From Saccostrea cucullata (Eukaryota), in NCBI RefSeq assembly GCF_032062105.1, contig NW_026924102.1, positions 124,001 to 188,000 on the forward strand: a DNA stretch of 64,000 bases, given 5' to 3'. Below the pieces are notes generated by a model, which had not been told where the DNA came from, ran no database searches, and was given only the letters and a program-made list of their open reading frames with translations. Below are positions 65 through 51,437 of this stretch, one piece after another. Made by a program: the position numbers and the translations under genes. How positions within the stretch are numbered: position 1 is the first letter of the stretch; every line of letters begins with the position of its first letter.

Positions 65-1472
65 CTTTCAACTAATTCCCCGATTGACACATCGTTCAGG
101 GAATCCCCCAGTTCTTCTGTTTCTCTTCTGCTGACCGTACTTAAAGCAGAGAAAAATAAATATGAATTATACAGGTCATGAATGTCTATGAAGAACAAAT
201 TTAAATACTTAAAAAATACTAACTGAGGTCTCTTCGGCGCATTAGGTGGTACACTGTAAATGAAAGACTATAACGTTAAAATTGAAAATAAGAAGATAAA
301 TGAATAAATACATGTGTATCTTACAAGGAGTATTTCATTAAATAAAATGAAGAGATGAAACTGATGGGATTTCTGTTTATCTATGTCATATATTTCACTG
401 ACCCCAATGAACTAGTATTCTCCAATTCACCATCCCCGTCTCTAAAACGTTTAGAAATAATTGCATGAACAAAATATATAAATATTATATTTAAGGAATG
501 GTAAATAAAACTATTAAAAAAAAATTTTTTAAATACTAACTTTTGTCTTTTGGGTGCATTAGGAGTCGCACTGTAAATGAAAGACTATAACTTTAAAATT
601 ATAAATAAAAAGATCAATGAATAAATAAATGTGTATTTTACAAGTAGTATTAAATTTTATCTCTTTAACTAAATTAAAAATTTTGATAATTAGTACTCAT
701 GGTTTTTTTTAATTTGAAAATGAAAAGATAAATGAATAAATACACGCGTATCGTACAAGGAGTATTAAATTTTATCTATTAATTAATTAAATAAAATGAA
801 GAGTGGAAACTGATGGAATATTTGTTTATCTATGTCATGTATTTCACTGACCCATCTTCTTCACCATCCCCGTTTCTGAAACGTTTAGAAATGAATGTGA
901 ACAAAATATGCTTAAATGTTACATTTAAGGAATGATAAATGAGGAGGGTTAATAAGACTTATTCTACTTACTCTTTACGGGGGGTCCCGATTGGCGTGCT
1001 AATTAATGTGTAGAAAAAAAATGCATAGTAATTAATGGTAAGAAATAGAAAAGAGAAAAAAAAACGAAAGAAAATGAATTCCAGTCTTTTAAAACCAATT
1101 TTCAGTAAAAGATTGAATTAGAGCCAGGCATTACTGACGGTCAATGCAGATGAGGATGATAAATTCATTAATAGATATGATTTTTAAAATTATTATGTTT
1201 CTTAAATACTTGTCAAGCGAAATAAAGTTAAAGAATGAAAATATTTTCTTTTTACCTCGTCCTCTTCCCATAAGACACTTCAAATCTACCAATTAAAAAA
1301 GAAATACAATAGCACAATCACTTACCAAAAATGACATAATTCTCAAGTTTTAAAAATGATGAAAGAGGACTTACGGACAGGGAACATTGTCTACTTTGTC
1401 AATTAGAGCGACCAAGTCCCCGATGATTTCTGTAATTACACCGCAAATACAAACAGGCGTTTTTGATGCCAT
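65..1472 (-). CDS. Uncharacterised multi-microexon gene, 3' end runs off the window. Exons: 1472-1375, 1285-1256, 998-972, 875-852, 570-541, 441-403, 253-224, 139-65
   Basis: All introns are GT..AG (84-281 nt). Internal exons are 30, 27, 24, 30, 39, 30 and 75 nt, all phase 2-2. They join into the stop-free protein MASKTPVCICGVITEIIGDLVALIDKVDNVPCPFEVSYGKRTSTPIGTPRKENGDGEEDGATPNAPKRQKDGDGELENTSSLGVPPNAPKRPHTVSRRETEELGDSLNDVSIGELVE... Confidence 0.8.
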
Positions 1473-1956
1473 GACTGGTAAGATTTCAAGGGAAAGTTTT
1501 CCTCTTTTTATTTGAAAAATGTATCATGTGATATGAGTACCAAATTTGAATAATAAAAACTAAGTCTTATGTACAGTGAATCTAGTGAAAAAGAGAAAAT
1601 GAAAAATTTGTACTGGTCATCCTCCCTGTCAATCAAAGAGGAGCCCAAAAAAGAAGGAAATCCCTGCGTGTGAAATTATACAATTCTGTCAGTCTTAATT
1701 AAAGATGACTCTAAATTAATGAACATACAATAAACAAGACTGAAAAAAAAATGCTAGTCTAGTAACGAAAACATTTTAACAGAGAAATCATCATGTTGTC
1801 ATTTTTACCATTACCATCTGTTCTGAACGGTGATTTATCGTTTTGAAAAATGTGGTCAGACATTTTTATTATGATTAGAAAGTGTTGTAAAGTAAATTTC
1901 CATCAGTGTCATCACTCACTGTGTAATTAAAGATATAAATATGGACAGGGTCATCA

Positions 1957-2289
1957 GTGCACTGGTCAGATTATAGGACATTCCGTTCCCCCAATACCTA
2001 CGGTGACGAGAAGATCAACAGTTCATCCTACTCCCACATTACAACACCCGTCGCTACGGACACTTCAACGAGGGACACGATCCTTAATACCCATGAGAGT
2101 TCAGACAAGGGTATCAGAAATGAGCTTGACTATTTGTTCATAACTATCCTTATACCCTTATTATTTATAATGTGTGTCTGTGTTTTGAAGCTAAAACGTA
2201 GGAAAAAATCTAATCTTGTAAATAATTCAATTGAGATGGAATGTGTTGATGAAGGTGAGACGATATTATACAAAGCCACAGATAAATAA
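1957..2289 (+). CDS. Small single-pass membrane protein (S/T-rich ectodomain, TM helix, basic stop-transfer, acidic tail); true 5' exon/start unresolved
   Basis: TM YLFITILIPLLFIMCVCVL followed by KLKRRKK. The ORF has no early ATG, so it is probably a terminal exon. A possible first exon is near 1793-1829. Confidence 0.6.
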   Translation: MHWSDYRTFRSPNTYGDEKINSSSYSHITTPVATDTSTRDTILNTHESSDKGIRNELDYLFITILIPLLFIMCVCVLKLKRRKKSNLVNNSIEMECVDEGETILYKATDK

Positions 2290-2481
2290 ATGCATGATCA
2301 AAATCAAATTTCCTTTTATCATATCAACTGAAAGTTAAAAAAAAAGAATGTTTAACAGAATCAAGATCCGTGATTTGTATGAATAGTTCTGTACTAATAT
2401 ATATCTTGTTTGCTACTAATATGATTTTTGAACTCATTATTCTTGTTATGATACCTGATTATCAACCAATATCCTTATTGT

Positions 2482-2799
2482 ATGCATGCATTAACACTGA
2501 TGGAGATTAAACTATTAAGTAAGTATTTACTTAATATATTTTCTGAAGTCTGAAATGCAATGAACACTATCGCGATTCATTAAGAATTCACACTCAGATT
2601 GAAATTAAAGTAATATATGTTTTTACATGTAATTAATTTTTTTCAAATTAATAATTACAGTAGACACAGCGTACGGGCTTGGGGTGACAGGAGTGTGCCT
2701 TATCATCATCATCGTGCTGTCCTGGGCAGTGAGACTACTACTTCGTAAGATGGGCATCACATGCAGACTCCCCATGAAGAAAAGTCGTGTAAAAAGGTA

Positions 2800-2867
<68 letters not shown>

Positions 2868-3075
2868 TTGCATTCATGAAATGTTACAATCTTGCACTTG
2901 CGATAACAAGTTAAAAACAAATCAGTACGAAAACATGTTTATAACATACAGGAGACCGGCAGCACGAGACATTGAGCTGAAGGACATAAGAACCGTAAGG
3001 ATAGAAACGGACGAGAGTGAGGATGAAGAGGTGCAGCTGAAAACCCGCTACGACCTGCGCGGAAGAAAAGAGTAA
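2482..3075 (+). CDS. Three-exon single-pass membrane protein of about 98 aa. Exons: 2482-2518, 2661-2796, 2952-3075. A further 3'UTR intron spans 3079-3190
   Basis: GTAAGT/GTAATT donors and CAG acceptors with matching phases (1, then 2). Product MHALTLMEIKLLIDTAYGLGVTGVCLIIIIVLSWAVRLLLRKMGITCRLPMKKSRVKRRPAARDIELKDIRTVRIETDESEDEEVQLKTRYDLRGRKE. AATAAA near 3403. Confidence 0.75.
2803..2863. repeat. (CT)n microsatellite in intron 2 of the TM gene
   Basis: Perfect dinucleotide run. Confidence 0.98.
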
Positions 3076-4710: not shown

Positions 4711-5467
4711 AAAGGTAATCATTGTATATAAAAGAATCTGCAACATTCTACAAACAATGTCATTATTTTCCCTACGGAAAATTTTCCAGAGTCCCGAAAT
4801 GTTTTTTACGCTTGAGCAGTATCACCCAACAGGAATTTGAGAATTGTTGAAATATCCAAAATAAAATAACTGTATATTACTTTTATTGTATATTATGTTT
4901 TAAGTCCTCTGAGGAGACTGACGTGCGTTACTTAAGGAAAAAAAACATCATGTTTCAGTGTGGTTATTGTGAATTAATGTTTAATGATTATGATAGCATG
5001 GCCGATCACGAAAAGGAACACGAAAGGAATATTAACAATACTGCAAGGTAAGAATGACCATTTGTTTACCTTCTTATGCACAATTCAGAAAGATATCGGA
5101 TAAAGAGAGATAACTCCGCTAACTTCAAATATCTGAGGTGAACTCGGGCATTACCTTGTTAACGCTCCTTGTAAAGTCACAACACAGAGACTTAACGTAA
5201 ATGTGAATAACCAAAATCATAGTATCAAGTAATGAAGTTGTGTTATTTCTATCCATCGATGATGGCTAATATATCATTGCAAATATATAGATGTAAATAA
5301 TTGTTTTTTTTCTTCCAATTTTTTTCTCTCGATGATAAATCTGACATTTAAAGAGAAAAAGAAACAGGGATCTAATTAATAAGGTGAAAAAATCATCAAT
5401 GAGTTTACTGTGTCATGTGTTTTGTTGTCAAACAAGTACTTTAAGATATGTATTTGACCCCCCGATT

Positions 5468-6375
5468 TAAATCAAAACGCACGTATGGTGCTCCATGCGA
5501 GATAATTGTCAATAAAACAGAGAGCGACTTCATGTATGGTGGACCGCTTGTGATAAAAATGATTAAAGTTATGGATCAATTGTATGGCGTCACATAATAG
5601 ATAAAATTCACCCCTATCAAAGTATACCATGTATGGTATTCCGTTTGTGATAAAATTCGATGAAAAATTGAAAAAAAGGTAAAATATATGGTAACCTTTT
5701 TGAGTTAAAAAAAAAATCTTTAAAAAGTTTTTTTTATTTACAACAGTTATTCAACCACCCTAAATCTAAATCAAAACACACGTATGGTGTTCCATGCGAG
5801 ATAATTGTCAATAAATCAGAGAGCGACATCATGTATGGTGGACTGCTTGTGATAAAAATGGTTAAAGTTATGGATCAATTGTATGGCGTCACATAATAGA
5901 TAAAATTCACCCCTATCAAAGTATACCATGTATGGTATCCCGTTTGTGATAAAAGTCGATGAAAAATTGAAAAAAGGTAAAATATATGGTAACCCTTTTG
6001 AGTTAAAAAAATCTTTAAAAAGTTTTTTTATTTACAACAGTTATTCAACCCCCCTCAATCTAAATCAAAACACATGTATGGTGTTCCATGTGAGAAAAAT
6101 GTCATTAAAATATAGAGAGCGACTTCATGTATGGAAAATTTACTCAAATCAAAGTAACCCATATACCGTAACCCGTTTTGTGATAAAAGTTAAAAAAAAT
6201 AAAATATACGGTAACTCATTTGAGATGAAATTGAATTTTAAAAAGTTTTTTTTAAATGTTTGATAGTTTAGCAAAATTTAAAAAAAAAAAAAATGAAAAA
6301 TGAGAAAGTTATTTTATAGGATGATTCGTTTTGAGATAAAGAAAAAAATTAAGAGTGGGAATGTATGGTAACAGA
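5468..6375. repeat. Higher-order repeat upstream of pPolB: units of about 299 bp built from monomers of about 50 bp with GTATGG-N12-GATAA
   Basis: GTATGG/ATATGG at 5483, 5534, 5582, 5631, 5686, 5782, 5833, 5881, 5930, 5984, 6076, 6129, 6363; most are followed 12 nt later by GATAA or GTTAA. Confidence 0.85.
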
Positions 6376-6427: not shown

Positions 6428-9400
6428 ATGAATGATTACAGTTCGGGCGTTTGTGAACAAGAACTGTTTCGAGACATCCAAAACATGGACTGGACACCTG
6501 TTACGGGAGACGACCTATTATACCAGGCGTCCACGTCCAGCGGTGCTCATGCAGAGAGCATGGACTTTAAGGACATTGCCGATTCCTCCTTCCACGGCGA
6601 GGAATCCCTGTTGATGGAAGAAGATGGACTCTTTTCGGAAATCACGGATACCTCTTTTCACGGTGAAGATTCTCTCCTTTGCGACATACCAGTGGATCCG
6701 CTGAGCGATTCATTAGCCGGTCAGTACGGTGCTGGACGAAAAGACGATTTCGATATTCGAATCATACGTGAAAAGAAATTGAAAAAGATGGGAGCCGTGG
6801 ACTTGCAGTACGAGTTGACGTTCCACGACGACCTCTTTCGGGAAAAAAAGAAGATGATCGAAGTCAAAAACGTCTTGAAAGACGCCTTCGAAGAGATGCT
6901 CGATCGAGTCAAGAAGGACCTTCGTCGCGGAGATCTCGTCAGGGCAGCCATCCATAATGATCATTTGGACTTGCCCGTGTTCGTCCCCTGTCGACCCATG
7001 GAGGAGATGGACGCAGAGACCATGCTAGAAAGCCTGATGATCGTCCTTAACAGTCACCAGGACCTGCCTTTCGATTCCTCTTGTCGAATCGATATCGGGG
7101 CCATCAAATATCCACGCGGTGGTACGGGAGTAAAGATGTCTTCCGTCGCTAAATCGATTGCCGAGAAGAGAGCCATTATAAAGATACGCAATACCGATAA
7201 CAAGTGTCTCGTCCGCGCTACTCTCGTCTCTTTGGCCCACAGTTGTCAAATTCACATCACTGAGTTTAACAACGTCAAGGCGCGTCATCCGACCCTCACG
7301 ACCGGGGAAATTCTCATTTTTTACCACCAGTGTCCGCTCTGGTATTGCAGGGATCTGCGAAAAAACCACAAAGGAGCCCAAGACAGCCTGACAAATCAGA
7401 TCTGTGAAACGATGAATATCGTCGATGACGGTCCGTTGTCCTACTTGGCCATCCCTCCTCTAGAAGATTTTCTCAACGTGAACCTCTACATCATCAGTGC
7501 GAAGATGGGGAACGCATTCTCTTACATCAGTGCCCATCACGACGAAGAACGAAAGAAACTATTCCTGCTGCACGACGACACGGAGGGGGCCGAACACTTT
7601 TATCCCATCACGACGCTGGCAGGTTTCTTTTGTCGGTCACGGTTCTGCAGTACGTGTTTAAAACCATACGAAAAACCATACGGACATAAATGCAAACACC
7701 ATTGCAATGTCTGCTTTTCCGATCATTGTCCCGTACTACAAAAGAGAGCTTGTCCAGACTGTCATCAGACCTGTCGCTCTGGGGCTTGTTTCATTCGACA
7801 TAAGAATCCCATGGAAGGAGGGACCACACCTTGCGATCTCCGATACAGATGTCCGACCTGCAAGAAGACTTTCTTACGACACGAGTTAAAACCCGAAGAT
7901 CACCGATGCGGTCATTACATCTGCAAGTCCTGCAGGCAATACGTAGATCCCGAACATCTGTGCTACGCCAGGAGACACCCTTCCAAGGAAAACGAAACCA
8001 GTCGACGATTCATTTTTGCCGACATCGAGGCCTCACAAAAGGACGAAATCGTCCAGTGTGAGTGGGGATACGCACCTCGACGCCTCAACGACTGTACCGA
8101 ATGTCGAACAGAGCAAGACCCGTGCCCCTCCTGTCGACTCTGTCAACACTGTCTCAAATCGCACTGCGGAAAATTTAAACATACCGTGGTCTTGGCAGTG
8201 TGTCAGACCGCCTGTGAAAATTGCGAGAACGACGACGTCACATTCGACAGTACGTGCGCTTCTTGTGGAGACCGATGCTCGACCTGTGACAAGAAGGACA
8301 AGAAAACCAAACAGTACCTTTCGCTTCCCTGTCCTGGTCGATGCGGACAGCGAGAGCGCGTCTTCCAGACCTTGTACGATCTCGGGATATGGATCTTTCG
8401 CGAACATCACAAAGGCTTTACCGTCCTGTTTCATAACCTCTCGTACGATGGCCAGTTTCTTCTGCAGTACTTACTGTCGCAGTCCATTCGTCCTTCCTTT
8501 ATCATTTACAGGGGAAGTAAAATTCAAATGTTCAACATCACCGGCCTTCAAATCCGAGTCATCGATTCGTTTAACTTCCTACCGATGGCCTTATCCAAAC
8601 TCCCCAAAGCCTTCCAGCTGGAATCGCTGGCCAAGGGGTACTTTCCTCACTTTTTTACATGCCAGGCCAACCGGAATTATGTGGGACCTTACCCACCTGC
8701 CGAGACTTATGGTCCCAATGCCATGTCTGTGGATGGTAGAAAAGAGTTCTTCAAATGGTACGACGCTAAAGTCACCAGTGGAGACCTCTTTGATTTTCAA
8801 CAAGAAATCCTCAAGTACTGCCGAAGCGACGTTGACATCCTCCGACGTGCCTGTCTCAAGTTCAAGAACCTCCTGCAGGAAGCAACCGGTAAAGAGGGAG
8901 GCCAAACCGTCGATGCGTTCGATTCCTGTACCATCGCGTCTCTCTGCATGGACGTATTTAAATCCAAGTTTTTAATGGAAGACTGGAGATGCCTGGTCCA
9001 AGAGGACGATGAGGAACGTTGGCTGGAAGTCAGGAAGTTTGACGGAGAGGCGATCGTGAATGACGAGGGTCGTTGGATTCCTTGGAATACTCTGAAGCAA
9101 CGGAACGTCGTCATCGTGAAAGAAGAGTTTGTCAAGTCCCCCATTGCTCGTCCTCCACCCAAGGGATATCCGTCCCGCATCCAGTACAGCCGCAAGTCCA
9201 TCTGCTGGTTAGAGTTACTGAGACATCGCGCTCAAACTTCGGGACGCATTTTGGACATTCAGCATGCACTCACGGGACGTGGAGAATACCATCTGCCCGG
9301 TACCCGATATTCCCTAGACGGATACGTTTCCCCCAGTGCCGAACACCCCCACGGCGTGGCTTACGAGTTCCACGGCTGTCTGTACCACGGCTGTCCCGTC

Positions 9401-10972
9401 TGTTACAAAGATCGAGACGCCCTACTGATCCCGAATTCGGAGCAGACGGCTTCGGAATTGTTTTCACTGACGCAGCACAAGGAACTTCAACTCCGTCAAC
9501 GGGGACTCAAAGTGGTCACCCTCTGGGAACACGAGTTTGACGCCATGTTAAAGACGGACGAGGAGGCCAAAGCGTTCGTCGACCGTTTAGAAGTGGTGGA
9601 CCGTCTCGATCCTCGGGACAGTCTGATGGGTGGGCGTACCAACGGATGCGTGCTCTACAAGCGAGCCACCAAGGACACGAAAATCAAATACGTGGACTTT
9701 ACCTCCCTGTACCCCTTTGTCAACAAGACGTGCCGTTACCCCGTCGGACACCCAGAGATCGTCACCCGGGATTTCGCCGACCTTTCGACCTATTTCGGAT
9801 TAGTCAAAGTCAAAGTCCTACCGCCCCGCGGTCTCTTTCATCCGGTCTTGGGTTACCGTACGGGAGGAAAATTGACCTTTCCTCTCTGTCGAACCTGCGT
9901 CGAACGGCAGCAACAGACCCCCTGTGTCTGCAACGAGGACCAAAGGGCTTTCACGGGAACGTATTGCACGCCAGAACTCTCAAAAGCCATCGAAAAAGGG
10001 TACGCGGTCTTGAAAATCTACGAGGTGTACCACTGGACGGAAACGACTCAGTACGACACGGCCACGAAGACCGGAGGCCTCTTTTCCTCCTACATCAACA
10101 TGTTTCTGAAAATAAAACAAGAGGCCAGTGGGCGACCGGCGTGGGTCAAGACCGAGTCGGATCTCGAAAGTTACATCAGGATGTACGAGGCCAAGGAAGG
10201 CATTCGCCTAGACCCCGACAAAATCCAAGTCAATGCGGGTCTAAGGAGTTTAGCCAAACTGTTATTGAATAGTTTTTGGGGGAAATTTGGTCAGCGCACG
10301 AATCTGACCAAGACCCAATTCCTTCACGACAGTCAGGCCCACTTCCTCTTCGGTCAAATGACCGATCCCACCGTACAGATTGTCGACTTTAACATCGTGG
10401 ATGACGAAAACCTCATGCTGTCCACCAAACGCGTTTCGGAAGAGATGTGTGCTCCGGGTCACACCAACGTGTTCCTGGCCTCTTTTACCACCTGCTGGGC
10501 CCGGCTCAAACTGTACGACTTACTAGATCAATTACAGACTCGGGTCCTTTATTGGGATACGGATTCCGTCATCTACGTGTCCAAGGCAGGGGAGTGGGAA
10601 CCTCCCACCGGAGACTACCTCGGAGAGCTCACCGACGAACTGGACGAAGGAGATTGGATCACGGAATTTGTCTGTAACGGTCCAAAAAACTACGCGTACC
10701 GGACGCATCAGGGAAAGCAGGTGTGCAAAGTGAAAGGCTTTTCTCTCAACTACGCCAACTCACAGATTCTCAACCTGGAAAGTATGAGAGACGCTATGTT
10801 TAATCGCGACGATCCGACGATGGGCATGTATCACACCACCAACGCCAAAAAGATCTGCCGGGAAAAGATTCATTCTGAGCTCTACAGTCAAGAAGAACTC
10901 AAACAATATTCGGCTGTCTACACTAAGAGAGTCGTGCAGAGTGACCTGACCACCCTTCCTTACGGATATTAA
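6428..10972 (+). CDS. Protein-primed family B DNA polymerase (pPolB) with N-terminal OTU-like domain, Zn-fingers, 3'-5' exonuclease and inserted VSR-like nuclease
   Basis: Motifs: DNKCLVRA...HFYPI (OTU-like); FADIE, HNLSYDG, YCRSDV (Exo I-III); LDGY...YEFHGCLYHGC (VSR-like); VDFTSLYP, KLLLNSFWGKFGQ, YWDTDS (Pol A-C). First ATG at 6428. Confidence 0.97.
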   Translation: MNDYSSGVCEQELFRDIQNMDWTPVTGDDLLYQASTSSGAHAESMDFKDIADSSFHGEESLLMEEDGLFSEITDTSFHGEDSLLCDIPVDPLSDSLAGQYGAGRKDDFDIRIIREKKLKKMGAVDLQYELTFHDDLFREKKKMIEVKNVLKDAFEEMLDRVKKDLRRGDLVRAAIHNDHLDLPVFVPCRPMEEMDAETMLESLMIVLNSHQDLPFDSSCRIDIGAIKYPRGGTGVKMSSVAKSIAEKRAIIKIRNTDNKCLVRATLVSLAHSCQIHITEFNNVKARHPTLTTGEILIFYHQCPLWYCRDLRKNHKGAQDSLTNQICETMNIVDDGPLSYLAIPPLEDFLNVNLYIISAKMGNAFSYISAHHDEERKKLFLLHDDTEGAEHFYPITTLAGFFCRSRFCSTCLKPYEKPYGHKCKHHCNVCFSDHCPVLQKRACPDCHQTCRSGACFIRHKNPMEGGTTPCDLRYRCPTCKKTFLRHELKPEDHRCGHYICKSCRQYVDPEHLCYARRHPSKENETSRRFIFADIEASQKDEIVQCEWGYAPRRLNDCTECRTEQDPCPSCRLCQHCLKSHCGKFKHTVVLAVCQTACENCENDDVTFDSTCASCGDRCSTCDKKDKKTKQYLSLPCPGRCGQRERVFQTLYDLGIWIFREHHKGFTVLFHNLSYDGQFLLQYLLSQSIRPSFIIYRGSKIQMFNITGLQIRVIDSFNFLPMALSKLPKAFQLESLAKGYFPHFFTCQANRNYVGPYPPAETYGPNAMSVDGRKEFFKWYDAKVTSGDLFDFQQEILKYCRSDVDILRRACLKFKNLLQEATGKEGGQTVDAFDSCTIASLCMDVFKSKFLMEDWRCLVQEDDEERWLEVRKFDGEAIVNDEGRWIPWNTLKQRNVVIVKEEFVKSPIARPPPKGYPSRIQYSRKSICWLELLRHRAQTSGRILDIQHALTGRGEYHLPGTRYSLDGYVSPSAEHPHGVAYEFHGCLYHGCPVCYKDRDALLIPNSEQTASELFSLTQHKELQLRQRGLKVVTLWEHEFDAMLKTDEEAKAFVDRLEVVDRLDPRDSLMGGRTNGCVLYKRATKDTKIKYVDFTSLYPFVNKTCRYPVGHPEIVTRDFADLSTYFGLVKVKVLPPRGLFHPVLGYRTGGKLTFPLCRTCVERQQQTPCVCNEDQRAFTGTYCTPELSKAIEKGYAVLKIYEVYHWTETTQYDTATKTGGLFSSYINMFLKIKQEASGRPAWVKTESDLESYIRMYEAKEGIRLDPDKIQVNAGLRSLAKLLLNSFWGKFGQRTNLTKTQFLHDSQAHFLFGQMTDPTVQIVDFNIVDDENLMLSTKRVSEEMCAPGHTNVFLASFTTCWARLKLYDLLDQLQTRVLYWDTDSVIYVSKAGEWEPPTGDYLGELTDELDEGDWITEFVCNGPKNYAYRTHQGKQVCKVKGFSLNYANSQILNLESMRDAMFNRDDPTMGMYHTTNAKKICREKIHSELYSQEELKQYSAVYTKRVVQSDLTTLPYGY

Positions 10973-11004
10973 CAACAAGACATTTTTTTTGTATGAAATC
11001 ATTT

Positions 11005-11064
11005 TTTATTGGCTCATGGTACATGTTTTTGTAATTCTTGTACAGAAATATAAATGTCAATAAA
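11005..11064. terminator. Convergent polyadenylation signals for pPolB (+) and the minus-strand structural block
   Basis: AATAAA at 11059-11064 on + and at 11010-11005 on -. Confidence 0.6.
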
Positions 11065-11196
11065 AGTTCCAAAAATCTCGAGTCTTTCTTCTTCTTTGTG
11101 AGAGTTGTGCATATGCTCAGAAGGTACTTCCGGTCGTATTCACTCGGACGGTCTGTTGCCTGAAAGATGATCACGTATGTTTTCGTATAAAATGTT

Positions 11197-11445
11197 TCAA
11201 AACTTGATCCAAGTCTTGTTCTTCTTTGGGAGAGTCGTGCGCATGCCCGGTGGGGACTTCCTCTTCACGGATCCGTCGTAAATCAGTCCCGAACCCCTCT
11301 GGCGATCCGTCACCGAGGGTTCGATCTGAGGGTCGGAAGGAGTCTCGGTGTTCGTTTCTTGGTCTCGTACCTCTTGACGATCATTCTGACTTTGTTTCAT
11401 CCGATCGAAGGTCGTCTTTTTCACGAGAACGTATTCCTCTGCCAT
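11197..11445 (-). CDS. Small Polinton ORF (82 aa), positionally PZ-like; contains a QRGSG motif
   Basis: ATG in good context, overlaps the upstream ORF, N-terminus MAEEYVLVKK and C-terminus WIKF resemble PZ-type termini as recalled. Confidence 0.6.
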   Translation of the reverse strand: MAEEYVLVKKTTFDRMKQSQNDRQEVRDQETNTETPSDPQIEPSVTDRQRGSGLIYDGSVKRKSPPGMRTTLPKKNKTWIKF

Positions 11446-11740
11446 CTTTGAAATGAGGTTTCAGAATCAGGGGTATGGCCTCTGCGTGTTTCCTCAATAA
11501 TTTCTTGATGGCGGTGTTGTCCACTGCTCGGTCACTGAGAGACTGAAGTAATGTTTTATGAACCTTGAGTTTTGTCTTGTAATAACCGGACACGGGGGGA
11601 TGTCCCGAGTACAGATTGAGAGCGATTTCTCGAAAAGCATTCAACTGCTCGTCCGACGCCAGGTTGACCAGTTCTTTCCTCTGTACGGGATCCGCTTCGT
11701 ACAGGAAACGGAGAAAAGTTGCGTGACGTCTAGGTCTCAT
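11381..11740 (-). CDS. Conserved Polinton PW-like (putative core) protein, 119 aa
   Basis: Pattern L..L...QRKELV..A...QL.AF.E.ALN.Y.G..P......L..HK..L..L. Start MRPRR at 11740 is preceded by a TATA-like element and Inr. Confidence 0.75.
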   Translation of the reverse strand: MRPRRHATFLRFLYEADPVQRKELVNLASDEQLNAFREIALNLYSGHPPVSGYYKTKLKVHKTLLQSLSDRAVDNTAIKKLLRKHAEAIPLILKPHFKDGRGIRSREKDDLRSDETKSE

Positions 11741-11778
11741 GACGAACAATGACGTCTCGAATGGGTCGGCGGTCGTAT

Positions 11779-12417
11779 TTATTGGGGCAGGTACACGACC
11801 GTTTCCCCTTCTTCCGGTAAGACGTTCGTGCGCAGGCGTCGATCTTCGGGACAGTGATTGGTCAGATCCACCAGAATGTATCCGTAAGGACGGCGGACGG
11901 CCTTGGCGTAGGCGTCCATCCAAAATTTAGAACGACCCGTAAACACCTGACTTCCGAAGGTGATGATCTGGCGATTGTCTCTCACGTTCTTGAATAGAAC
12001 CACGTGTTGACAGTTCAACAGGATGCTCTTGGCGTAGACTCCGGGCGGGTAGAGGTTCTGAGACAAGAGAAATGCCGTCACGTTGCCGTGAGACACCATG
12101 GTCTGAAACAGGTGCAGGGCATCGGGGCTCTTGGTCGCCAGGTGAATCATGTCGTCCAAGACCACTACCGTGTGTGGCGAGTCCAGACACCAATCTCGGA
12201 TCTCTTCTCGGGTAGGCAATCCTCGGTAGGTGGTGAAATCGGGGAGAGTCGCTTGCATGTCGTCCACCACGGGTTGGTCTTCCAGATAACAGTACACGAT
12301 CTTACTAGGAGAGACTTCGAACGTGTCGGGACTTTTCAACAGGTTCCACACCCAGTGCGTCTTGCCGCACATGGTTCCCCCCACGACGGCAAACGAGGTC
12401 GGAGTCTTAAATTTCAT
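11779..12417 (-). CDS. A32/FtsK-like genome packaging ATPase
   Basis: Walker A GGTMCGKT, Walker B VVVLDD, LSQNLY and PYGYILVD motifs. Confidence 0.95.
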   Translation of the reverse strand: MKFKTPTSFAVVGGTMCGKTHWVWNLLKSPDTFEVSPSKIVYCYLEDQPVVDDMQATLPDFTTYRGLPTREEIRDWCLDSPHTVVVLDDMIHLATKSPDALHLFQTMVSHGNVTAFLLSQNLYPPGVYAKSILLNCQHVVLFKNVRDNRQIITFGSQVFTGRSKFWMDAYAKAVRRPYGYILVDLTNHCPEDRRLRTNVLPEEGETVVYLPQ

Positions 12418-12550
12418 CGTGACGTTCTCTTGGTAAAGGCTGTCAGAGACTAACGTCTCTCTAGAGAAAACACCTCGTTAAATAATCACAACACCTTTTT
12501 TTTGCGTGCACTTTTTTTATTAGACACGAAAATCAATGACATGAACCACA

Positions 12551-12610
12551 TTTTCCCGGGCCGCCGCCGCGCGCGCGAACCCGAGGGATCCGGAAACTGG
12601 TTTCCGGAAA
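12551..12610. promoter_or_regulatory. GC-rich upstream element of the ATPase gene with palindrome TCCGGAAAC-TG-GTTTCCGGA
   Basis: GC island in an AT-rich spacer; inverted repeat at 12589-12608 with ETS-like CCGGAA cores; E2F-like TTCGCGC on the minus strand. Confidence 0.5.
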
Positions 12611-12736
12611 TCTTTGATGATGGACAATGCGAATACCAATCCATAAAATAAAAGATACAATGTGCATTCTTAGGATCATACATACATACAGAATAAACAT
12701 TTTTTTTTATATTTAAGAGTCTTCAAGCATATAATG

Positions 12737-13183
12737 TCAAAGAAGGCGATCTCCCTTTAAAATAACGTCACGTACGAGGGACTCTGACGTCGTACGAATC
12801 ACATCGGCCATGGATAGTCCTTTCACTCGACAATACAGGTAAAATAAGGCATGAAGTCCGCAACTGGTGGCAGCATCCGGCTGTACTTGTACGTTGTTGT
12901 AGAGGCAGAACAAGGCGTTGCGATCGATAAAGTCTCTCAGACGACCGTCGTACTCTCCCGGCAATCTTCCGAAACTGTCGAAAAATTCGCATTGGTCGGC
13001 ACTGGCGAACCAGTAAGCGACCCAGTGCGTCCCCTTCTTGTCGATGGGATCCGTGTTGCAGACGAAGGCCGAGGGAAACTGTCGAACTCGCCCGGGTAGC
13101 GTATCGGAAGCAAACACCCCCCGAAAATGAAGTTTCAACCCCGGCAACGTCTCTACTCGTTGAAGTAACTGTAACGTGTCCAT
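12737..13183 (-). CDS. Adenain-like (C5) cysteine maturation protease
   Basis: GVFASD, NTD, GTHWVA (His), EFFDSFG (Asp), VQ...SCG (Gln/Cys). Confidence 0.95.
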   Translation of the reverse strand: MDTLQLLQRVETLPGLKLHFRGVFASDTLPGRVRQFPSAFVCNTDPIDKKGTHWVAYWFASADQCEFFDSFGRLPGEYDGRLRDFIDRNALFCLYNNVQVQPDAATSCGLHALFYLYCRVKGLSMADVIRTTSESLVRDVILKGDRLL

Positions 13184-13185
13184 GT

Positions 13186-14499
13186 TTACATCTGTCGGAT
13201 CTCTCGAGCTTGGTCGACGAGGAGCAGTCCTGGATATTCGCAGAAGGCCAGTGCGCTCACGGTCTCCGTGGTGGGCGAGGCAAATCGAGCGTATACTCCG
13301 ACGTTTGCCTGATGTACCAGGTTTATATACCCCTCACCCAGGTCGTTGGGGTCGAGGTCAAAGGCGTAAATGGCGTAGCCTTTAGAAAACTGGTCGCGGT
13401 CGATGATCAGGCCGTCGTCCTTGTACCATTTTTCGGAAGCTTGATACAGGTTGCAGAGCGCCGTGACGTAATTTCGATCGTCGCCAAAGTCCATCTTCAT
13501 GGGACGGACGGGGGTGGGTTCTCCGTTGACGGTCACGACGATTTCGGACAGATTCAGGTGTTGAAAGTTGTAAGGATTGCCTTCGTAGCTTCCGTTCACG
13601 GCCGACTGTTTCACAAAGACCACGTACATCTTGGAAGGTCTTCTTCCGTTCCACACGTCGTCCCAGTAGACTTCACTGGTCTTGTCCGAGATGGTCATCA
13701 TCTTGACGTCGGTCTTGAGATAATTGTAACGGGCCGGCGATTTGGTGATGGCGTTGGCATGGTTCAACAGGACGGCACTGTCTAATCGGATCTTGCACGC
13801 CTTGAAGACGGCATCGAGGATGGTGACTTTGTAACTGGGCGAAGCCTCCGCGCTCATCAGCACAAACTCGTTCCTCGAACGAAAGAGTCTCAGCTGTAAG
13901 TCGACCCCGTTGATCAGGTACTTGTCCAGGTAGAAACAGTCGACGTACAGGGGACCTTCCAGATCGAAAGTTCTGGACATTTGCGTGAACACGTACCGTC
14001 CTCGGAGTCCCTGGTTGCGTCCTGTGGCGGCATCTGCGTCATCCAAGACTTCCTTGTCGGGGTAATACAGCTGAGACTGTAGTTGCGAGTTGCTGGCGGC
14101 GGGTGAGTTGGATAAGAGGACTTTGAGGTAGGCTTTCCAAGGATAATTGTTGGCGTTCTGCGAGACGCATTTTCCGTTCATGTAGACGTCGATCTGCGAA
14201 AACAAAGACTGCAACGGCAAGTTGACGATACCCGTCTTTTCGGAGGCCGCCAGTGCCGTGCCGTCCGCTTTAGTGATCTTGGCTTTCAAGTAGAGTCGGC
14301 TCCTTCTCAAGTCGATGTATTCGTTTCCCCCTCCCGGAATGGCAAATTCGAGAGGAGCGGTGTCTCCGTCAAAGGAGGAGACGGGTCGAATCTCCGAAAA
14401 ATAAATCTTTTGAACAGCCACCTGATTGGGAGGATCGCTAAAGAGAGCCAGTTCGGAGGGTTCTGCCACGGACGTGTTGATCTCGCTCAAAAATGCCAT
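13186..14499 (-). CDS. Double jelly-roll major capsid protein (PY/hexon-like)
   Basis: 437 aa; SELALF.DPP.Q, PLEF.IPG...[28 protein letters not shown] motifs typical of Polinton MCP. Confidence 0.93.
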
Positions 14500-14501
14500 G
14501 A

Positions 14502-14957
14502 TTAAAAGATGGTTTTCTTTGGAAGACGGGATTTTCTCTGCGTGGTTTTTGTGGTTTTGGGTTTCCTTTTCTTTAGGCTTCTGGCTCGTTTACGGACTTT
14601 CGTCTTCTGGCTCCGGACACGTCCTTTCCCTTTGGAGGTCGATGTGCGACTGACAGATTTCTTCTTCTTTTTTCTTTTTATAGTTCTCTTCAGAGGTATG
14701 TGAGGCTCGTCGTTACGCATGGTTTCTTTCAGATCGGACAGGGCTCGCTCTTGCTCGGCGGCTACGGGTGTCACCAGCTGTACGTTCTGTTGGGGAATGC
14801 GAGATTTCAAGGGAAGCATGTAAGCTCTTCTGCGGTTTAGGATCCCACCTCCTCTCTGGCTGTTGCGTCGTAGGGTAGGAATGAAATTTTCGCCATCTTC
14901 CGTGTGGCGAAATTGTTCCCATAAGGCCGGATTCGAAATGTAAGTGGGTCCAGACAT
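14502..14957 (-). CDS. Basic core/DNA-condensing protein (adenovirus pVII/pX-like by analogy)
   Basis: QRGGG motif, [11 protein letters not shown] motif, K/R-rich C-terminal half, located between penton and MCP. Confidence 0.75.
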
Positions 14958-14963
14958 GTTGGA

Positions 14964-15371
14964 TCAGAGACGCCGAAACACGAGTGTCAACGTCGACTCT
15001 CCGACCAAGAATGAAACGTCGCCGTCGTTTTTGTCTCTTATATACACGTGAACGTCCCGCAGGTCATTGATGCGTAACGGTATGCGATAGGGTTGCAGAA
15101 AGATGACGTTGCGGTCGCTTTCCAGCACGATGCGCCTCAGGAGGGGTTTCTGATGTTCCCCGACGATGCTATCGTCACAGACGGAACAGTAGACGAAGAT
15201 TTCCTTGTCGGACGTCGGTTTGACGTTCGAGTTCCAAAATTCGGTCAGTTCCACCGTCCAATCCCCCGTCAAGGGTAAAGGACGGGGTAACCGCACTCTA
15301 AAGTCGTCAGGTCGATTGTTGTGGTGGACGGAGGGACTGTCCGTAGACTTGAGAACCATTCGCATCGACAT
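14964..15371 (-). CDS. Minor capsid protein/penton (PX), short single jelly-roll
   Basis: L.S.DS...H.NN.P.DF.V.LP.PL.L.G.W.V.L.E, FVYCSVC..SIVG....PLLR, I.I.D..G..V.F..G. Confidence 0.88.
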   Translation of the reverse strand: MSMRMVLKSTDSPSVHHNNRPDDFRVRLPRPLPLTGDWTVELTEFWNSNVKPTSDKEIFVYCSVCDDSIVGEHQKPLLRRIVLESDRNVIFLQPYRIPLRINDLRDVHVYIRDKNDGDVSFLVGESTLTLVFRRL

Positions 15372-15401
15372 CTTCTCTAGTACTGATGAATTGAGTCGGC
15401 A

Positions 15402-16526
15402 TCACGTCTCTTTTATGTCGGACTGAGGAATCCAGCTGTCGAATTTTTTGGGCCAGCCCAGCCATCTGACCAGAACCTCTTCTTTCCCGCGAACTTTGCG
15501 TTTCCGCAAGATCTTGTCTATTCGCCAGACGGTCTCATCGTCTTTCGACACTTTCTGAAGTTCGCTGGCGTAAAACGTTCCTCGAATTGGGTCGTCCATC
15601 ATGTCCTTCAATTTGTAGATGGGTATGTCTTGAGACACGAAACGATCACTCACGATGAAGATTTCTTCCGTGTACGTCTGGTCGTAATCGCGTTGAAACG
15701 CCCGTTTCAGATGCGTGATTCGAACTTGATCACCCTTTTTAAATCTGAAGGGTTTGCGTTTTTTCAGAGATTTCTTCCCTCGGGGTATGCGTGCGTCTTT
15801 CTGTCGACGTGCTAAATAAGCATCTAATCGCACTTCTTCTTCGTTCTCTTGGGTCACGGAAGACGGCGTCCGTCCGTTCAGCGAGCGATTGGGCGTATCG
15901 TTGATGGAATGCACCACGTCTTGAAGAATGTTTAGGTACTTGTATTTCTGAAGGTGGGTGAAGTAACGATACAGTCTCTTCTTTAAAGTCTGTATGTATC
16001 GCTCCGCAAAATTGGCTTTGGTCTCGTTCAGGGCGTAAAATATCTTGATGTTCTGCTCTCTCAGGTATTTTTGAAGGTATCGATTGTAAAATTCCGAGCC
16101 CTTGTCGGTGCGGATGGCTCTGGGTCGTCTAGGGCCACTCAGTACGTCTTTGAACGCATCGATGACGGACTTGGATTTCCGGTCTTTCAAGGGTCGAACC
16201 CACAGAAAACGAGAAAACACGTCCACGATCACCAGCAGAAATTTGATGCCGTCGTTGTACTCGGACAAGTTCTGAACATCGGCCAGATCGGCTTCCCATT
16301 GATAGTCGATCCCTTGAACCACGACTCGTCTCCGCTTGAAACCACGTCGCCTCAGTTTCTTTTGCAACGAGTAAGCATCTTGGTTTTGTAAGAATTTTTT
16401 GATTTTTCTCAAACCAATATTATATTTGCCTTCTCGTTTCACCACATCATATAACTTGGAAGGTCCGGCAAACGATCCGGCATGCCGAGGATCGTACCAG
16501 ATTTTTTTCAGGTACTCTTCCATCAT
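15402..16526 (-). CDS. Retroviral-like DDE integrase (rve) with C-terminal chromodomain
   Basis: EADLAD, RTDKGSEF, AERYI triad; WRIDKIL...LVRWLGWPKKFDSWIP chromodomain. The ORF track start at 16553 is TTG; the first ATG is 16526. Confidence 0.96.
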   Translation of the reverse strand: MMEEYLKKIWYDPRHAGSFAGPSKLYDVVKREGKYNIGLRKIKKFLQNQDAYSLQKKLRRRGFKRRRVVVQGIDYQWEADLADVQNLSEYNDGIKFLLVIVDVFSRFLWVRPLKDRKSKSVIDAFKDVLSGPRRPRAIRTDKGSEFYNRYLQKYLREQNIKIFYALNETKANFAERYIQTLKKRLYRYFTHLQKYKYLNILQDVVHSINDTPNRSLNGRTPSSVTQENEEEVRLDAYLARRQKDARIPRGKKSLKKRKPFRFKKGDQVRITHLKRAFQRDYDQTYTEEIFIVSDRFVSQDIPIYKLKDMMDDPIRGTFYASELQKVSKDDETVWRIDKILRKRKVRGKEEVLVRWLGWPKKFDSWIPQSDIKET

Positions 16527-16840
16527 CCGATCACTAGCACTGTTCGAATGCAAATGACTTGAACCCGTTTCACACCTCCATTTTTATATTTATAAAAAGA
16601 CCTCTCCTAGTCATAAAAAAATAAACAACACACATTTCAACAAACCAAATTTTATTCATCAGATCAAATACAAACAATAGTCTCCTCTCACTACTTCGGT
16701 CGACCTTGTCCATACGGATCGGAGCACCTGACGTGTCCTAGATCGGTCGGTTCGGATTCTCGAAGGAGACGTGGGTGAATGGTCTCATGATTTTTTTTTG
16801 GTCTTTGAAAAAAAAGCCACAGTTCATAGTTTTCGTTCAC

Positions 16841-17308
16841 TCATCGTACTTTTCCATCGGTCACCATGTTAGCGAAGACACAATTCTCGGACCAGCGGAG
16901 ATGTTCTCTGTAGGCATCGTCGAAGGGTTCCCAATTCTTCAGAGTCCAGCCACAGGAGAAGCAAGTGACTTTGTCTCCGATCTCGGTGTAAATGAACCCA
17001 GATCGTGCTAGATCCGTCTTGTTGGGACCTTTGAGAAACTTGGGCCATTCTTTAAAGCTGGCATAGCGTTCGGCAAAGTTGACGTATTCCGGGTACTTCC
17101 AAGATTTTCGTACGACAGGCGGAGGAATGTTCTCGACTGGCAGTCGTACAAACTCGTTTGATGTCCCCCGTACCCCCGACGACTTGTAAGGGCTGACCAG
17201 AACGAATCGGGTGTCGGGGTCTCTCTTTCGAGCAGTGGTTTGGGTCAAGAGGTTGGGTGCACTGTCCGTCTCCACGACATTAGGCATGCAATCCAACGTC
17301 GAAGTCAT
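16841..17308 (-). CDS. Single-BIR inhibitor-of-apoptosis-like protein (no RING)
   Basis: R.ASF..WP, LARSGF.Y...GDKVTCFSC...L..W...DD...EH..W...C. Confidence 0.93.
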
Positions 17309-17390
17309 GTTATCGTGACGATGTGTTCACTAGTAATGAAAGCCGAGAATGAGAGACGAGACATTAAAGGGTCTTGATCACGTGCTTGAC

Positions 17391-17422
17391 GGGAAAAACC
17401 TGTGACGTCATAGGTTTTTCCC
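17391..17422. promoter_or_regulatory. 32-bp palindrome: Rel/Dorsal-like kB site, CRE, kB site
   Basis: GGGAAAAACC-TG-TGACGTCA-TA-GGTTTTTCCC, one mismatch from perfect dyad, in the divergent promoter between BIR and the 17728 ORF. Confidence 0.7.
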
Positions 17423-17727
17423 CGATGTGATGGACCATGAAGGTACTCGGGAGAATTTCATTGTGACACAAAGGGGGGAAAGAACAATGGGAGTATTATC
17501 TCTATTGTTTGAGCAAGGGGGTAACAACAATGACGGATCATCACGGATGAGTCCCTTCGTGACCCTTAGACGACCTTTCCCACGATTCAATGGGAGTCAA
17601 ACACAATGACTCTATTCTTGGAACAATAAAGGGGACGCTGTGACTGCGCATAACGTCCTAGGTGGCAATGTTAAAAAGCAGAGGTTTCCATCAGAAAGAT
17701 CATACCTCCTCTAGCATACGGACCAGA

Positions 17728-18183
17728 ATGATTTCCAACAAGAAATATCAACTCGAAATGATAGATGATTCAGGCTTTCATCTATTCATGAAAAAGGGTG
17801 CAGCTGTCAAACAACTGATTGACCACCATATTGCCAACGACATGAGTACAGAATCCTGTGATTTCTGTAAAAAACAGCACGTTCTCAGAAGTAAGCTCGT
17901 CCATGAGAAACACTGTCTTGTCCGATTAGCTTTGGAAGCGCAATCGGACGTTACAAAAATGACCACATTCTGTTTGCGAGCACAGGATATCCAAGACGAA
18001 TCGCACGGAAAGAACCTGGTGTTTTTCTGGGATATCATGATGGTCACTATGGCCGACCGTATTCCCTTCGAGGACATGAGAGCTGCTTATTACGAATCCC
18101 TTTTTGAAAGTTACGACCGCGGAGAAATGGAATTCCTGTGGCCAGACGGAGTCTGGCGTAAAGAAGACCCATGTTACACTTAA
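17728..18183 (+). CDS. Hypothetical protein with CxxC...H...C putative Zn-binding motif
   Basis: Clean ORF with CDFCKKQH...HEKHC; TATA-like TTAAAAAG upstream; AATAAA at 18249. Confidence 0.65.
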   Translation: MISNKKYQLEMIDDSGFHLFMKKGAAVKQLIDHHIANDMSTESCDFCKKQHVLRSKLVHEKHCLVRLALEAQSDVTKMTTFCLRAQDIQDESHGKNLVFFWDIMMVTMADRIPFEDMRAAYYESLFESYDRGEMEFLWPDGVWRKEDPCYT

Positions 18184-18343
18184 CTTTTAATCAATGAAAA
18201 AGAACAGTTTTTCATGAAACCATGTTTTTATTCTGGTTACATGTCAACAATAAATTTTTTAACCTCTTATTTTTCGTTGTCTTTTTTTTAAACATTAGAT
18301 TCAACACAACATGGATTAAAAAAAAAAACAAAACTTTTGCTCA

Positions 18344-49159: not shown

Positions 49160-51437
<2,278 letters not shown>

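What the first reader, a model, noticed from the sequence alone, without database searches (positions are those of the whole stretch)
65..1472. Hidden symmetric-microexon gene in the Polinton arm
This region has no ORF on the track. Seen in the sequence: eight GC-richer islands bounded by AG/GT signals on the minus strand. All seven internal exons (30, 27, 24, 30, 39, 30, 75 nt) are multiples of three in phase 2-2 and splice into a stop-free protein, which is unlikely by chance. Any internal exon can therefore be skipped in frame, recalling schistosome micro-exon genes that generate isoform diversity. Polinton genes are generally described as intron-poor, so a combinatorially spliceable gene in an endogenous virus would be new to my knowledge. 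Membership in the element is inferred from the missing left TIR, compact introns and absence of host TE insertions.
Basis: partly seen in the sequence, partly recalled or inferred. Interest (0 to 1): 0.92.

Follow-up and report, generated by a model that had tools for sequence, protein, structure and literature searches.

The report
Short-exon oyster gene beside a Polinton
The eight small exons are really there and look like the start of a spliced oyster gene built partly by duplicating an exon pair. Nothing in the window places it inside the neighbouring virus-like element, so it is most likely an ordinary, unannotated host gene.

Summary
Observation confirmed. On the minus strand of 65-1472 there is an ATG exon (98 nt) plus seven AG/GT-bounded exons of 30, 27, 24, 30, 39, 30 and 75 nt. 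All are phase 2-2 and stop-free, with GC 43-63% against 15-28% in the introns. Only phase 2 is open, and it is the phase set by the ATG exon. GTNAGT donors occur 8 times on this strand, 0 on the other, 1.4 expected.

Exons 4+5 and 6+7 with their introns are a tandem duplication, so only about five internal exons are independent. Symmetry is largely inherited. Tandem repeats elsewhere in the window mimic such chains.

The host is a Saccostrea-type oyster. The Polinton is real (6428-20214) and its polymerase is complete at its first residue. No inverted copy of its right end exists anywhere in the window.

The 6.4 kb between carries host-like composition, a (TC)30 microsatellite, local repeats, a plus-strand membrane-protein gene and a zinc-finger-like exon.

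Membership in the element is unproven and, on balance, unlikely (about 0.15-0.2). Intron-bearing cargo genes in Mavericks are already described in nematodes. No homologue, family or expression evidence was found. Exon skipping is arithmetically possible but untested.

The parts
1375..1472 (-). Exon 1: ATG at 1472, 98 nt, donor GTAAGT. It encodes a hydrophobic, Cys-containing N-terminal 32 residues plus 2 nt.
   Evidence: mean Kyte-Doolittle 2.07 over residues 6-24, two acidic residues. No Pfam, PDB or representative-library hit.
1256..1285 (-). Exon 2, 30 nt, phase 2-2, acceptor TAG, donor GTAAAA.
972..998 (-). Exon 3, 27 nt, phase 2-2, donor GTAAGT. A Pro-rich basic peptide that faintly resembles exons 5 and 7.
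852..875 (-). Exon 4, 24 nt, phase 2-2, donor GTCAGT. Acidic GDGE motif. Paralogue of exon 6.
541..570 (-). Exon 5, 30 nt, phase 2-2, donor GTTAGT. PNAPKR motif. Paralogue of exon 7.
403..441 (-). Exon 6, 39 nt, phase 2-2, donor GTCAGT. It differs from exon 4 by an in-frame 15-nt length difference.
224..253 (-). Exon 7, 30 nt, phase 2-2, donor GTTAGT. PNAPKR motif.
65..139 (-). Exon 8, 75 nt as modelled. Its donor is weak (GTTAAT) and the frame stays open to window position 1, so its 3' edge is uncertain. The gene runs off the window.
517..950 (-). Duplication unit A (end of intron 3, exon 4, intron 4 with an internal ~115-nt repeat, exon 5).
200..516 (-). Duplication unit B (intron 5, exon 6, intron 6, exon 7, start of intron 7). 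Aligned intron identity to unit A is 81%, exon identity 72%.
1614..1638 (-). Candidate small upstream exon (unverified). It is a GC island ending at a GT donor and would join the AG at 1475-1476 in frame with the ATG at 1472.
   Evidence: exon 1 can be entered in phase 1. Inference only.
1977..3075 (+). Context: a plus-strand intron-bearing gene with exons 1977-2254, 2661-2796 and 2952-3075 (stop). It encodes two hydrophobic transmembrane-like segments and a charged tail, and lies between the short-exon gene and the element.
   Evidence: No homologue found in the 60-192 aa length range.
4950..5047 (+). Context: an ATG-initiated exon-like ORF with a C2H2 zinc-finger pattern, followed by GTAAGA.
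   Evidence: (zf-C2H2_4 E=3e-4, below the gathering score)
5465..6260 (.). Context: an AT-rich tandem array (period 299, about 2.3 copies by TRF to 6153, with degenerate continuation). It reaches to within about 170 nt of the polymerase start.
6428..20214 (.). Context: the Polinton/Maverick as visible in the window. Genes: pPolB 6428-10972 (+); ATPase region 11381-12417 (-); protease 12737-13183 (-); double-jelly-roll capsid 13186-14499 (-); rve-chromo integrase 15402-16553 (-); BIR 16841-17308 (-); PC4-like 19225-19833 (-). The right terminal repeat region is 19834-20214. No left terminal repeat was found.

Best explanation
Window 65-1472 (minus strand) is the 5' part of an unannotated, lineage-restricted oyster host gene whose remainder lies beyond the window's left edge.

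Shown: it has an ATG exon encoding a hydrophobic N-terminus. Seven short exons follow, encoding a Pro/Gly/Asp/Glu/Lys/Arg-rich peptide in which acidic GDGE-type exons alternate with basic exons ending in Pro-Lys/Arg-Arg/Lys. That this peptide is disordered is inferred from its composition. At least one two-exon module, introns included, has been tandemly duplicated.

Inferred: the uniform 2-2 phase is mostly inherited through that duplication. Only frame-neutral units survive duplication, so the symmetry need not be selected for combinatorial splicing. The exons are probably spliced constitutively, like any short exons with strong GTNAGT donors. The Polinton about 5 kb away is a neighbour that has lost its left end or been separated from it. 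The gene is not its cargo.
For: Gene model:
- Exact AG/GT bounds, the single open phase set by the ATG exon, and the GC contrast.
- GTNAGT occurs 8 times against 0 on the other strand and 1.4 expected.
- The symmetric chain exceeds non-repeat controls.

Duplication:
- Units 517-950 and 200-516 align throughout, introns included.
- The exon 4/6 length difference is 15 nt, which is in frame.
- The PNAPKR core of exons 5/7 differs at three third-codon positions, all synonymous.

Host setting:
- The window maps to a 232-kb contig of assembly GCA_032062105.1. Its GPCR is 81% identical to one from Saccostrea echinata.
- All 500-nt tiles of 1-6500 score host-like against a Polinton k-mer model, and the switch falls at the polymerase.
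- Exon GC3 is 0.41, against 0.46-0.51 in host genes and 0.56-0.68 in most element genes.
- CpG o/e of both flanks next to the element is alike (0.97 and 0.95-0.98), against 1.1-1.25 inside it.
- Another intron-bearing gene on the other strand, a microsatellite and several local repeats lie between the gene and the element.
- The six core gene families (weak hits counted) are all found within 6428-20214.
Against: - No transcript, homologue or family supports the model. The exon 1 peptide has 0 hits among 1.84 billion representatives, and Pfam and PDB are empty.
- Between the paralogous units, exons are not better conserved than introns: 72% against 81%, p=0.19, with splice-proximal intron at 89%.
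- The polymerase is complete from its first residue compared with 1517-1524-aa relatives, yet no trace of a left terminal repeat is present. A truncation would therefore have to end in the short stretch just upstream of the start codon. That coincidence would be removed if the AT-rich DNA belonged to the element.
- Cargo regions of nematode Mavericks also differ in GC from the core and carry introns, so composition alone cannot exclude cargo.
Confidence: 0.6

Rival explanations
1. The AT-rich 6.4 kb is an extended left arm of the Polinton, the left terminal repeat lies beyond the window, and the short-exon gene (with the membrane-protein gene) is host-derived cargo carried by the element.
For: - The left terminal repeat is absent from the whole window although the right one is sharp.
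- The polymerase ORF is complete at residue 1.
- The AT-rich tandem array runs almost up to its start codon.
- Nematode Mavericks carry 2-5 kb cargo regions with introns and distinct GC next to a TIR.
Against: - The arm would have to exceed 6.4 kb and hold at least two intron-bearing genes in opposite orientation.
- It would also hold a perfect (TC)30 microsatellite and several local duplications.
- Its k-mers and CpG o/e are indistinguishable from the host flank on the other side.
- The element's core gene families are already accounted for without it.
- No copy-level evidence could be gathered.
Confidence: 0.17
2. The exon chain is not a functional protein-coding gene. It could be a decaying pseudogene or duplicated gene fragment, or a spliced non-coding transcript whose open frame is partly fortuitous and partly copied by duplication.
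For: - No homologue, family or annotated product was found.
- Exons are no better conserved than introns between the paralogous units.
- Tandem repeats elsewhere in the window generate equally long 'symmetric exon' chains.
- Only about 110 whole codons are visible.
Against: - Only one of three phases is open, and it is the one fixed by the ATG exon.
- The conserved PNAPKR core carries three synonymous and no replacement differences.
- The exon 4/6 length difference is in frame.
- Strong, strand-specific donor consensus and GC islands match the exon bounds exactly.
Confidence: 0.15
3. This is a functional variant of the main reading. The gene encodes a secreted precursor or a MEG-like variable protein. 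The hydrophobic exon 1 would act as a signal sequence, the Lys-Arg sites as processing sites, and exon skipping would yield in-frame isoforms.
For: - Exon 1 is hydrophobic (mean KD 2.07 over residues 6-24).
- A Gly-Lys-Arg site and several Lys-Arg or Arg-Lys sites alternate with acidic spacers.
- Every single-exon skip keeps the frame without a junction stop.
Against: - Two acidic residues sit inside the hydrophobic stretch, and no dedicated signal-peptide predictor was available.
- No similarity to any MEG or neuropeptide family was found.
- There is no expression data.
- The symmetry is explained by duplication.
Confidence: 0.08

Closest known systems
Schistosome micro-exon genes (MEGs)
   Same: Both have a run of very short exons whose lengths are multiples of three, flanked by a longer first exon. 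Any internal exon can therefore be skipped in frame. Exon sizes here (24-75 nt) fall within the 3-81 bp quoted for MEGs (bioRxiv 10.1101/2023.06.21.545858).
   Different: - MEGs are described as specific to Schistosomatidae, as secreted proteins with an N-terminal signal peptide, with 10-20 exons and introns up to 5 kb.
- Here the host is an oyster and the introns are 84-281 nt.
- No sequence similarity was found, a signal peptide is unproven, and no isoforms are known.
- Part of the symmetry is a recent tandem duplication.
Intron-bearing cargo genes of nematode Mavericks (wasp and krma genes; Widen et al., bioRxiv 10.1101/2022.07.12.499685)
   Same: Both involve a region next to one end of a Maverick that differs in GC from the intronless core genes and contains genes with introns.
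   Different: - In nematodes the cargo lies between a demonstrated left TIR and the integrase, is 2-5 kb long, and recurs with the element in many species.
- Here no left TIR is seen, and the stretch exceeds 6.4 kb and sits next to the polymerase.
- Recurrence with the element could not be examined.
Ordinary metazoan genes with tandemly duplicated symmetric exons encoding repetitive or disordered linkers (established knowledge of exon duplication and shuffling)
   Same: - A two-exon module is duplicated together with its introns.
- Unit lengths of 54 and 69 nt keep the frame.
- The repeated peptide motifs are low in complexity.
   Different: Phase 2-2 is the rarest symmetric class in animals (general knowledge, not tested here). 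The gene has no detectable relatives.

Membership tests
Schistosome micro-exon gene (MEG) family | Internal exons very short and symmetric (multiples of three), making up most of the coding sequence | tested here: met
   Seven of seven internal exons are 24-75 nt, all multiples of three, phase 2-2. Only the 5' part of the gene is visible.
Schistosome micro-exon gene (MEG) family | N-terminal signal peptide; secreted product | tested here: inconclusive
   Exon 1 is hydrophobic (KD 2.07) but has two acidic residues in the stretch. No signal-peptide predictor was available.
Schistosome micro-exon gene (MEG) family | Sequence relationship to known MEGs; restriction to Schistosomatidae | tested here: not met
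   The host is an oyster. No Pfam hit for exons 1 and 8 and no relative of exon 1 among 1.84 billion representatives. The other exons are too short to search singly.
Schistosome micro-exon gene (MEG) family | Protein variation produced by exon skipping | not testable with these tools
   No transcript data. Only the arithmetic possibility was checked.
Polinton/Maverick cargo gene | Lies between the two terminal inverted repeats of the element | tested here: inconclusive
   The right terminus is at 20214. No inverted copy of 19840-20214 exists anywhere in the 64-kb window. The contig left of the window was not read.
Polinton/Maverick cargo gene | Travels with the element: found beside the core genes in independent copies | not tested
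Polinton/Maverick (the neighbouring element itself) | Protein-primed family B polymerase, rve integrase, adenain-like protease, double-jelly-roll capsid, A32/FtsK-like ATPase | tested here: met
   DNA_pol_B_2 E=8.5e-49, rve 1e-10, Peptidase_C5 3e-6. The DJR-like domain (1.5e-3) and Pox_A32 (9.5e-3) hits fall below their gathering scores.
Polinton/Maverick (the neighbouring element itself) | Terminal inverted repeats at both ends and a 6-bp target duplication | tested here: not met
   Only one end is present in the window. The target duplication cannot be assessed.

The most novel reading that the evidence does not exclude
An oyster Maverick carries a left arm longer than 6.4 kb, host-like in composition, with at least two intron-bearing passenger genes. 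One of them is a MEG-like gene of symmetric short exons that can yield in-frame isoforms. This would be the first such architecture reported in an endogenous virus-like element of a mollusc.
Probability: 0.1. Interest if true: 0.6.

Novelty: new member of a known kind. Interest (0 to 1): 0.25.

Why it matters
The main reading gives one more unannotated, fast-evolving oyster gene that shows how tandem exon-pair duplication produces runs of symmetric short exons. That is useful for annotation but not surprising.

It also gives a practical warning for scans of this kind. Tandem repeats, both here and in the 166-167-bp arrays elsewhere in the window, make 'symmetric exon chains' look more improbable than they are.

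If the minority reading were true, it would extend Maverick cargo capture from nematodes to molluscs and to a gene type suited to isoform diversity. That would be of moderate interest to people who study mobile elements.

Tried and rejected
- The exon 1 peptide was searched against 1.84 billion representative proteins and gave no hit.
- Pfam on exons 1 and 8 and on the neighbouring gene's exons gave nothing meaningful. PDB sequence search with exon 1 gave nothing. Rfam on 1-6500 gave only sub-threshold chance-level hits.
- A homologue search with the membrane-protein ORF found none in its length range.
- Twenty ORFs of 1-6400 were looked up by exact sequence, to find a non-element handle for reading the contig further left. 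None is in the collection. ORFs starting with GTG or TTG may have failed only because the reference translates them as Val or Leu.
- The GPCR look-up failed with the long ORF and worked with the called product.
- The Saccostrea echinata GPCR locus aligns with the window only around the GPCR and has no match to 1-6430, so it gave no synteny evidence.
- A self-comparison of 1-6430 with the right-hand host DNA found no shared repeat family.
- The bacterial promoter/terminator scan is irrelevant here and showed no enrichment.
- The resemblance of exon 3 to exons 5/7 is too short to establish.
- The GC island at 1128-1149, with an unused GTCAGT, could not be fitted as an in-frame exon.
- CpG o/e does not separate the left region from host DNA, because host tiles range from 0.33 to 0.98.

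Full report
**1. The observation.**
- There is an ATG at 1472. Exon 1 ends at 1375 (98 nt, donor GTAAGT).
- Seven internal exons follow at 1285-1256, 998-972, 875-852, 570-541, 441-403, 253-224 and 139-65. Their lengths are 30, 27, 24, 30, 39, 30 and 75 nt.
- Each is preceded by a T-rich tract plus AG and followed by GT.
- All are entered and left in phase 2, and neither the exons nor the split codons hold a stop.
- Exon GC is 0.43-0.63 and intron GC 0.15-0.28. The introns are 84-281 nt.
- No ORF longer than 53 aa exists in 1-1500 on either strand, so an ORF track would indeed be blank.

**2. Is it more than chance?** Four tests say yes.
- A blind segmentation by GC alone finds 11 islands in 1-1500. 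Ten fall in the eight exons, and every exon has one.
- Of the three phases in which exons 2-8 could be read, phase 0 has 8 stops, phase 1 has 2 and phase 2 has none. Phase 2 is the phase imposed independently by the ATG exon and its donor.
- The extended donor motif GTNAGT occurs 8 times on the minus strand of 1-1500 and never on the plus strand. Shuffles give 1.4, and the background in the window's host DNA is 0.4-1.0 per kb. Six of the eight model donors carry it.
- An exon-chain finder that knows nothing of the model gives a symmetric chain of 7 here. Its rules were AG/GT bounds, a pyrimidine tract, GC contrast, consistent frame and no stops. It gives 0-1 on the opposite strand and on the reversed sequence.
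- Over 130 host tiles, the finder gives at most 4 in real and reversed controls. The exceptions are a few tiles that reach 5-8.

Those exceptions matter. In the real sequence they are two 166-167-bp tandem arrays at 37349-38460 and 49331-51175. Each repeat unit happens to hold an AG...GT segment of 30 nt, so tandem repetition by itself manufactures 'symmetric exon chains'. I take the long chains in the reversed control to come from the same arrays, but I did not check this.

**3. The chain is partly a duplication.** Exon 4, intron 4 and exon 5 (unit 517-950) and exon 6, intron 6 and exon 7 (unit 200-516) align along their whole length, introns included. Intron 4 also holds an internal ~115-nt repeat.
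- Two of the seven internal exons are therefore copies, and the number of independent symmetric exons is about five.
- It could be four if exon 3 is an older copy of exons 5/7, which their short peptides hint at but cannot prove.
- The uniform 2-2 phase is thus largely inherited. Only frame-neutral units (54 and 69 nt here) can be duplicated inside a coding region without damage.
- Between the two units, aligned exon positions are 72% identical (39/54) and intron positions 81% (201/248; Fisher p=0.19). The 20 nt next to the splice sites are 89% identical (71/80).
- Coding constraint is nevertheless suggested by two details. The length difference between exons 4 and 6 is 15 nt, which is in frame. 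In exons 5/7 the six codons encoding PNAPKR differ at three third positions, all silent, while replacements cluster at the exon ends.

**4. What the visible product looks like.** Exon 1 encodes 32 residues with three cysteines and a hydrophobic stretch (mean Kyte-Doolittle 2.07 over residues 6-24), interrupted by two acidic residues.
- Exons 2-8 encode a Pro/Gly/Asp/Glu/Lys/Arg/Thr/Ser-rich peptide of low complexity. Acidic GDGE-type exons alternate with basic exons ending in Pro-Lys/Arg-Arg/Lys.
- One K-R-x-K motif straddles the exon 5/6 junction. One Gly-Lys-Arg site is present.
- This fits a disordered linker of a nuclear protein or, less likely, a secreted precursor with dibasic sites. I cannot decide between them.
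- The gene continues past window position 1. Exon 8's donor (GTTAAT) is the weakest of the eight, and the frame stays open through it to the window edge.
- A small GC island ending at a GT at 1613-1612 could be an upstream exon joining the AG at 1475-1476 in frame. This is inference only.

**5. Searches for relatives.** This limits power severely, because six exons are under 14 residues.
- Exon 1 has no relative with E<=0.001 among 1.84 billion representative proteins.
- Exons 1 and 8 have no Pfam family, and exon 1 has no PDB relative.
- A product containing exon 1 as modelled is therefore apparently not among the predicted proteins of the collection. The same contig does carry spliced gene calls elsewhere.

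**6. Where we are.** The single-exon GPCR at 47010-47990 is recorded on NCBI assembly GCA_032062105.1, contig JAVVLV010006239.1 (232,462 bp).
- Its nearest named relatives are from Saccostrea echinata (81%) and S. cucullata (63%). The host is therefore an oyster of, or near, the genus Saccostrea.
- From the locus coordinates I infer that the window is about record 124001-188000, so some 124 kb of contig lie to the left.
- Mavericks are reported in all mollusc genomes surveyed (PMC10294476), so the element's presence is ordinary.

**7. The element.** 6428-20214 is GC 0.41-0.55 against 0.28-0.31 to its left and 0.32-0.37 just to its right. It encodes the following.
- A 1514-aa protein-primed polymerase on the plus strand.
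- On the minus strand: an A32-like ATPase region, an adenain-like protease, a double-jelly-roll capsid protein, an rve-chromodomain integrase, a BIR protein and a PC4-like protein.
- The ATPase region (11381-12417) is covered by two overlapping ORFs in different frames. That is consistent with one frameshift, which I did not verify against relatives.
- The right end is sharp at 20214, with internal direct repeats in 19857-20202.
- I took this terminus by window coordinates and did not use the letters quoted in the finding.
- No inverted copy of 19840-20214 exists anywhere in the 64-kb window.
- The polymerase aligns from its residue 1 to residue 1 of a 1524-aa relative. Relatives are 1517-1524 aa. 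The ORF is therefore complete, and the element reaches at least to 6428.

**8. Is the gene inside the element?**

Against:
- Every 500-nt tile of 1-6500 scores host-like in a third-order k-mer comparison, and the sign changes at the polymerase.
- Exon GC3 is 0.41. The GPCR and the neighbouring gene have 0.46-0.51, and most element genes 0.56-0.68.
- CpG o/e next to the element is the same on both sides (0.97 left, 0.95-0.98 right), against 1.1-1.25 inside it.
- The 5 kb between gene and polymerase contains:
  - a plus-strand three-exon gene ending in a stop at 3075, which encodes transmembrane-like segments;
  - a perfect (TC)30 microsatellite, a 90-bp doublet and a 299-bp array;
  - dispersed hairpin-bearing repeats at 3491-3603 and 4266-4377 and neighbouring duplications;
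  - a zinc-finger-like first exon at 4950-5047.
- 'Absence of host repeats' is therefore not what the sequence shows, and the introns are no more compact than the neighbour's.
- The six core gene families (weak hits counted) are all found within 6428-20214.

For:
- The left terminal repeat is wholly missing although the polymerase start is intact. A truncation must then have ended in the short stretch just upstream of the ATG, and the AT-rich array runs almost up to it.
- Nematode Mavericks carry 2-5 kb regions of distinct GC with intron-bearing cargo genes beside a TIR (bioRxiv 10.1101/2022.07.12.499685). Composition therefore cannot by itself exclude cargo.

I put the cargo reading at about 0.15-0.2.

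**10. Verdict.** Its symmetry owes much to exon-pair duplication. Placement in the Polinton and combinatorial splicing are unsupported by anything in the window. Interest is low to moderate.

Noticed in passing
window 37349-38460 (+) and 49331-51175 (opposite orientation): Two arrays of a 166-167-bp tandem repeat (6.6 and 11.1 copies) lie in inverted orientation on either side of the GPCR gene. Each unit holds an AG...GT segment of 30 nt, so the arrays imitate chains of symmetric exons in an automatic scan.
   Followed up: partly
window 1977-3075 (+): A three-exon plus-strand gene encodes a Ser/Thr-rich stalk, two hydrophobic segments each followed by a basic stretch, and a charged tail ending at a stop. 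No homologue or family was found. Its upstream exons were not located and may lie left of the short-exon gene, which would then be nested within it.
   Followed up: partly
window 16841-17308 (-) and 19225-19833 (-): The Polinton carries a BIR (inhibitor-of-apoptosis) domain protein (E=5e-21) and a PC4-like transcriptional coactivator protein (E=6e-25) as accessory genes between the integrase and the right end.
   Followed up: no
window 11381-12417 (-): The packaging ATPase region of the element is covered by two overlapping ORFs in different frames. This is consistent with one frameshift but was not verified against relatives.
   Followed up: no
window 3491-3603 and 4266-4377; 4099-4271 and 4354-4532: Dispersed local repeats (80-82% identical) are present, the first pair with a central hairpin and a sub-threshold miRNA-like Rfam hit (mir-982, E=0.055). 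They could be MITE-like elements or local duplications.
   Followed up: partly
window 4950-5047 (+): An ATG-initiated exon-like ORF with a C2H2 zinc-finger pattern is followed by GTAAGA. No downstream exons were identified before the element.
   Followed up: no
window 5465-6260: An AT-rich 299-bp tandem array, with a recurring short motif, continues to near the polymerase start codon. Whether it belongs to the host or to the element is unresolved.
   Followed up: partly
window 1128-1149 (-): A GC island inside intron 2 has an unused GTCAGT donor motif at 1138. It fits no in-frame exon and may be an alternative or decayed exon.
   Followed up: partly
window 25464-25532: A perfect 32-nt inverted repeat with a 5-nt spacer lies in host DNA.
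   Followed up: no
window 28030-28500 (+): An ORF with a weak reverse-transcriptase hit (E=2.5e-4) suggests a retroelement fragment. Repeats from 28.3-29.1 kb recur at 52.1-52.6 kb and several times in the Saccostrea echinata locus L003.
   Followed up: no
window 6428-10972 (+): The polymerase has a ~660-residue N-terminal extension ahead of the DNA_pol_B_2 match, including a Cys/His-rich stretch. It is shared with relatives of 1517-1524 aa.
   Followed up: no
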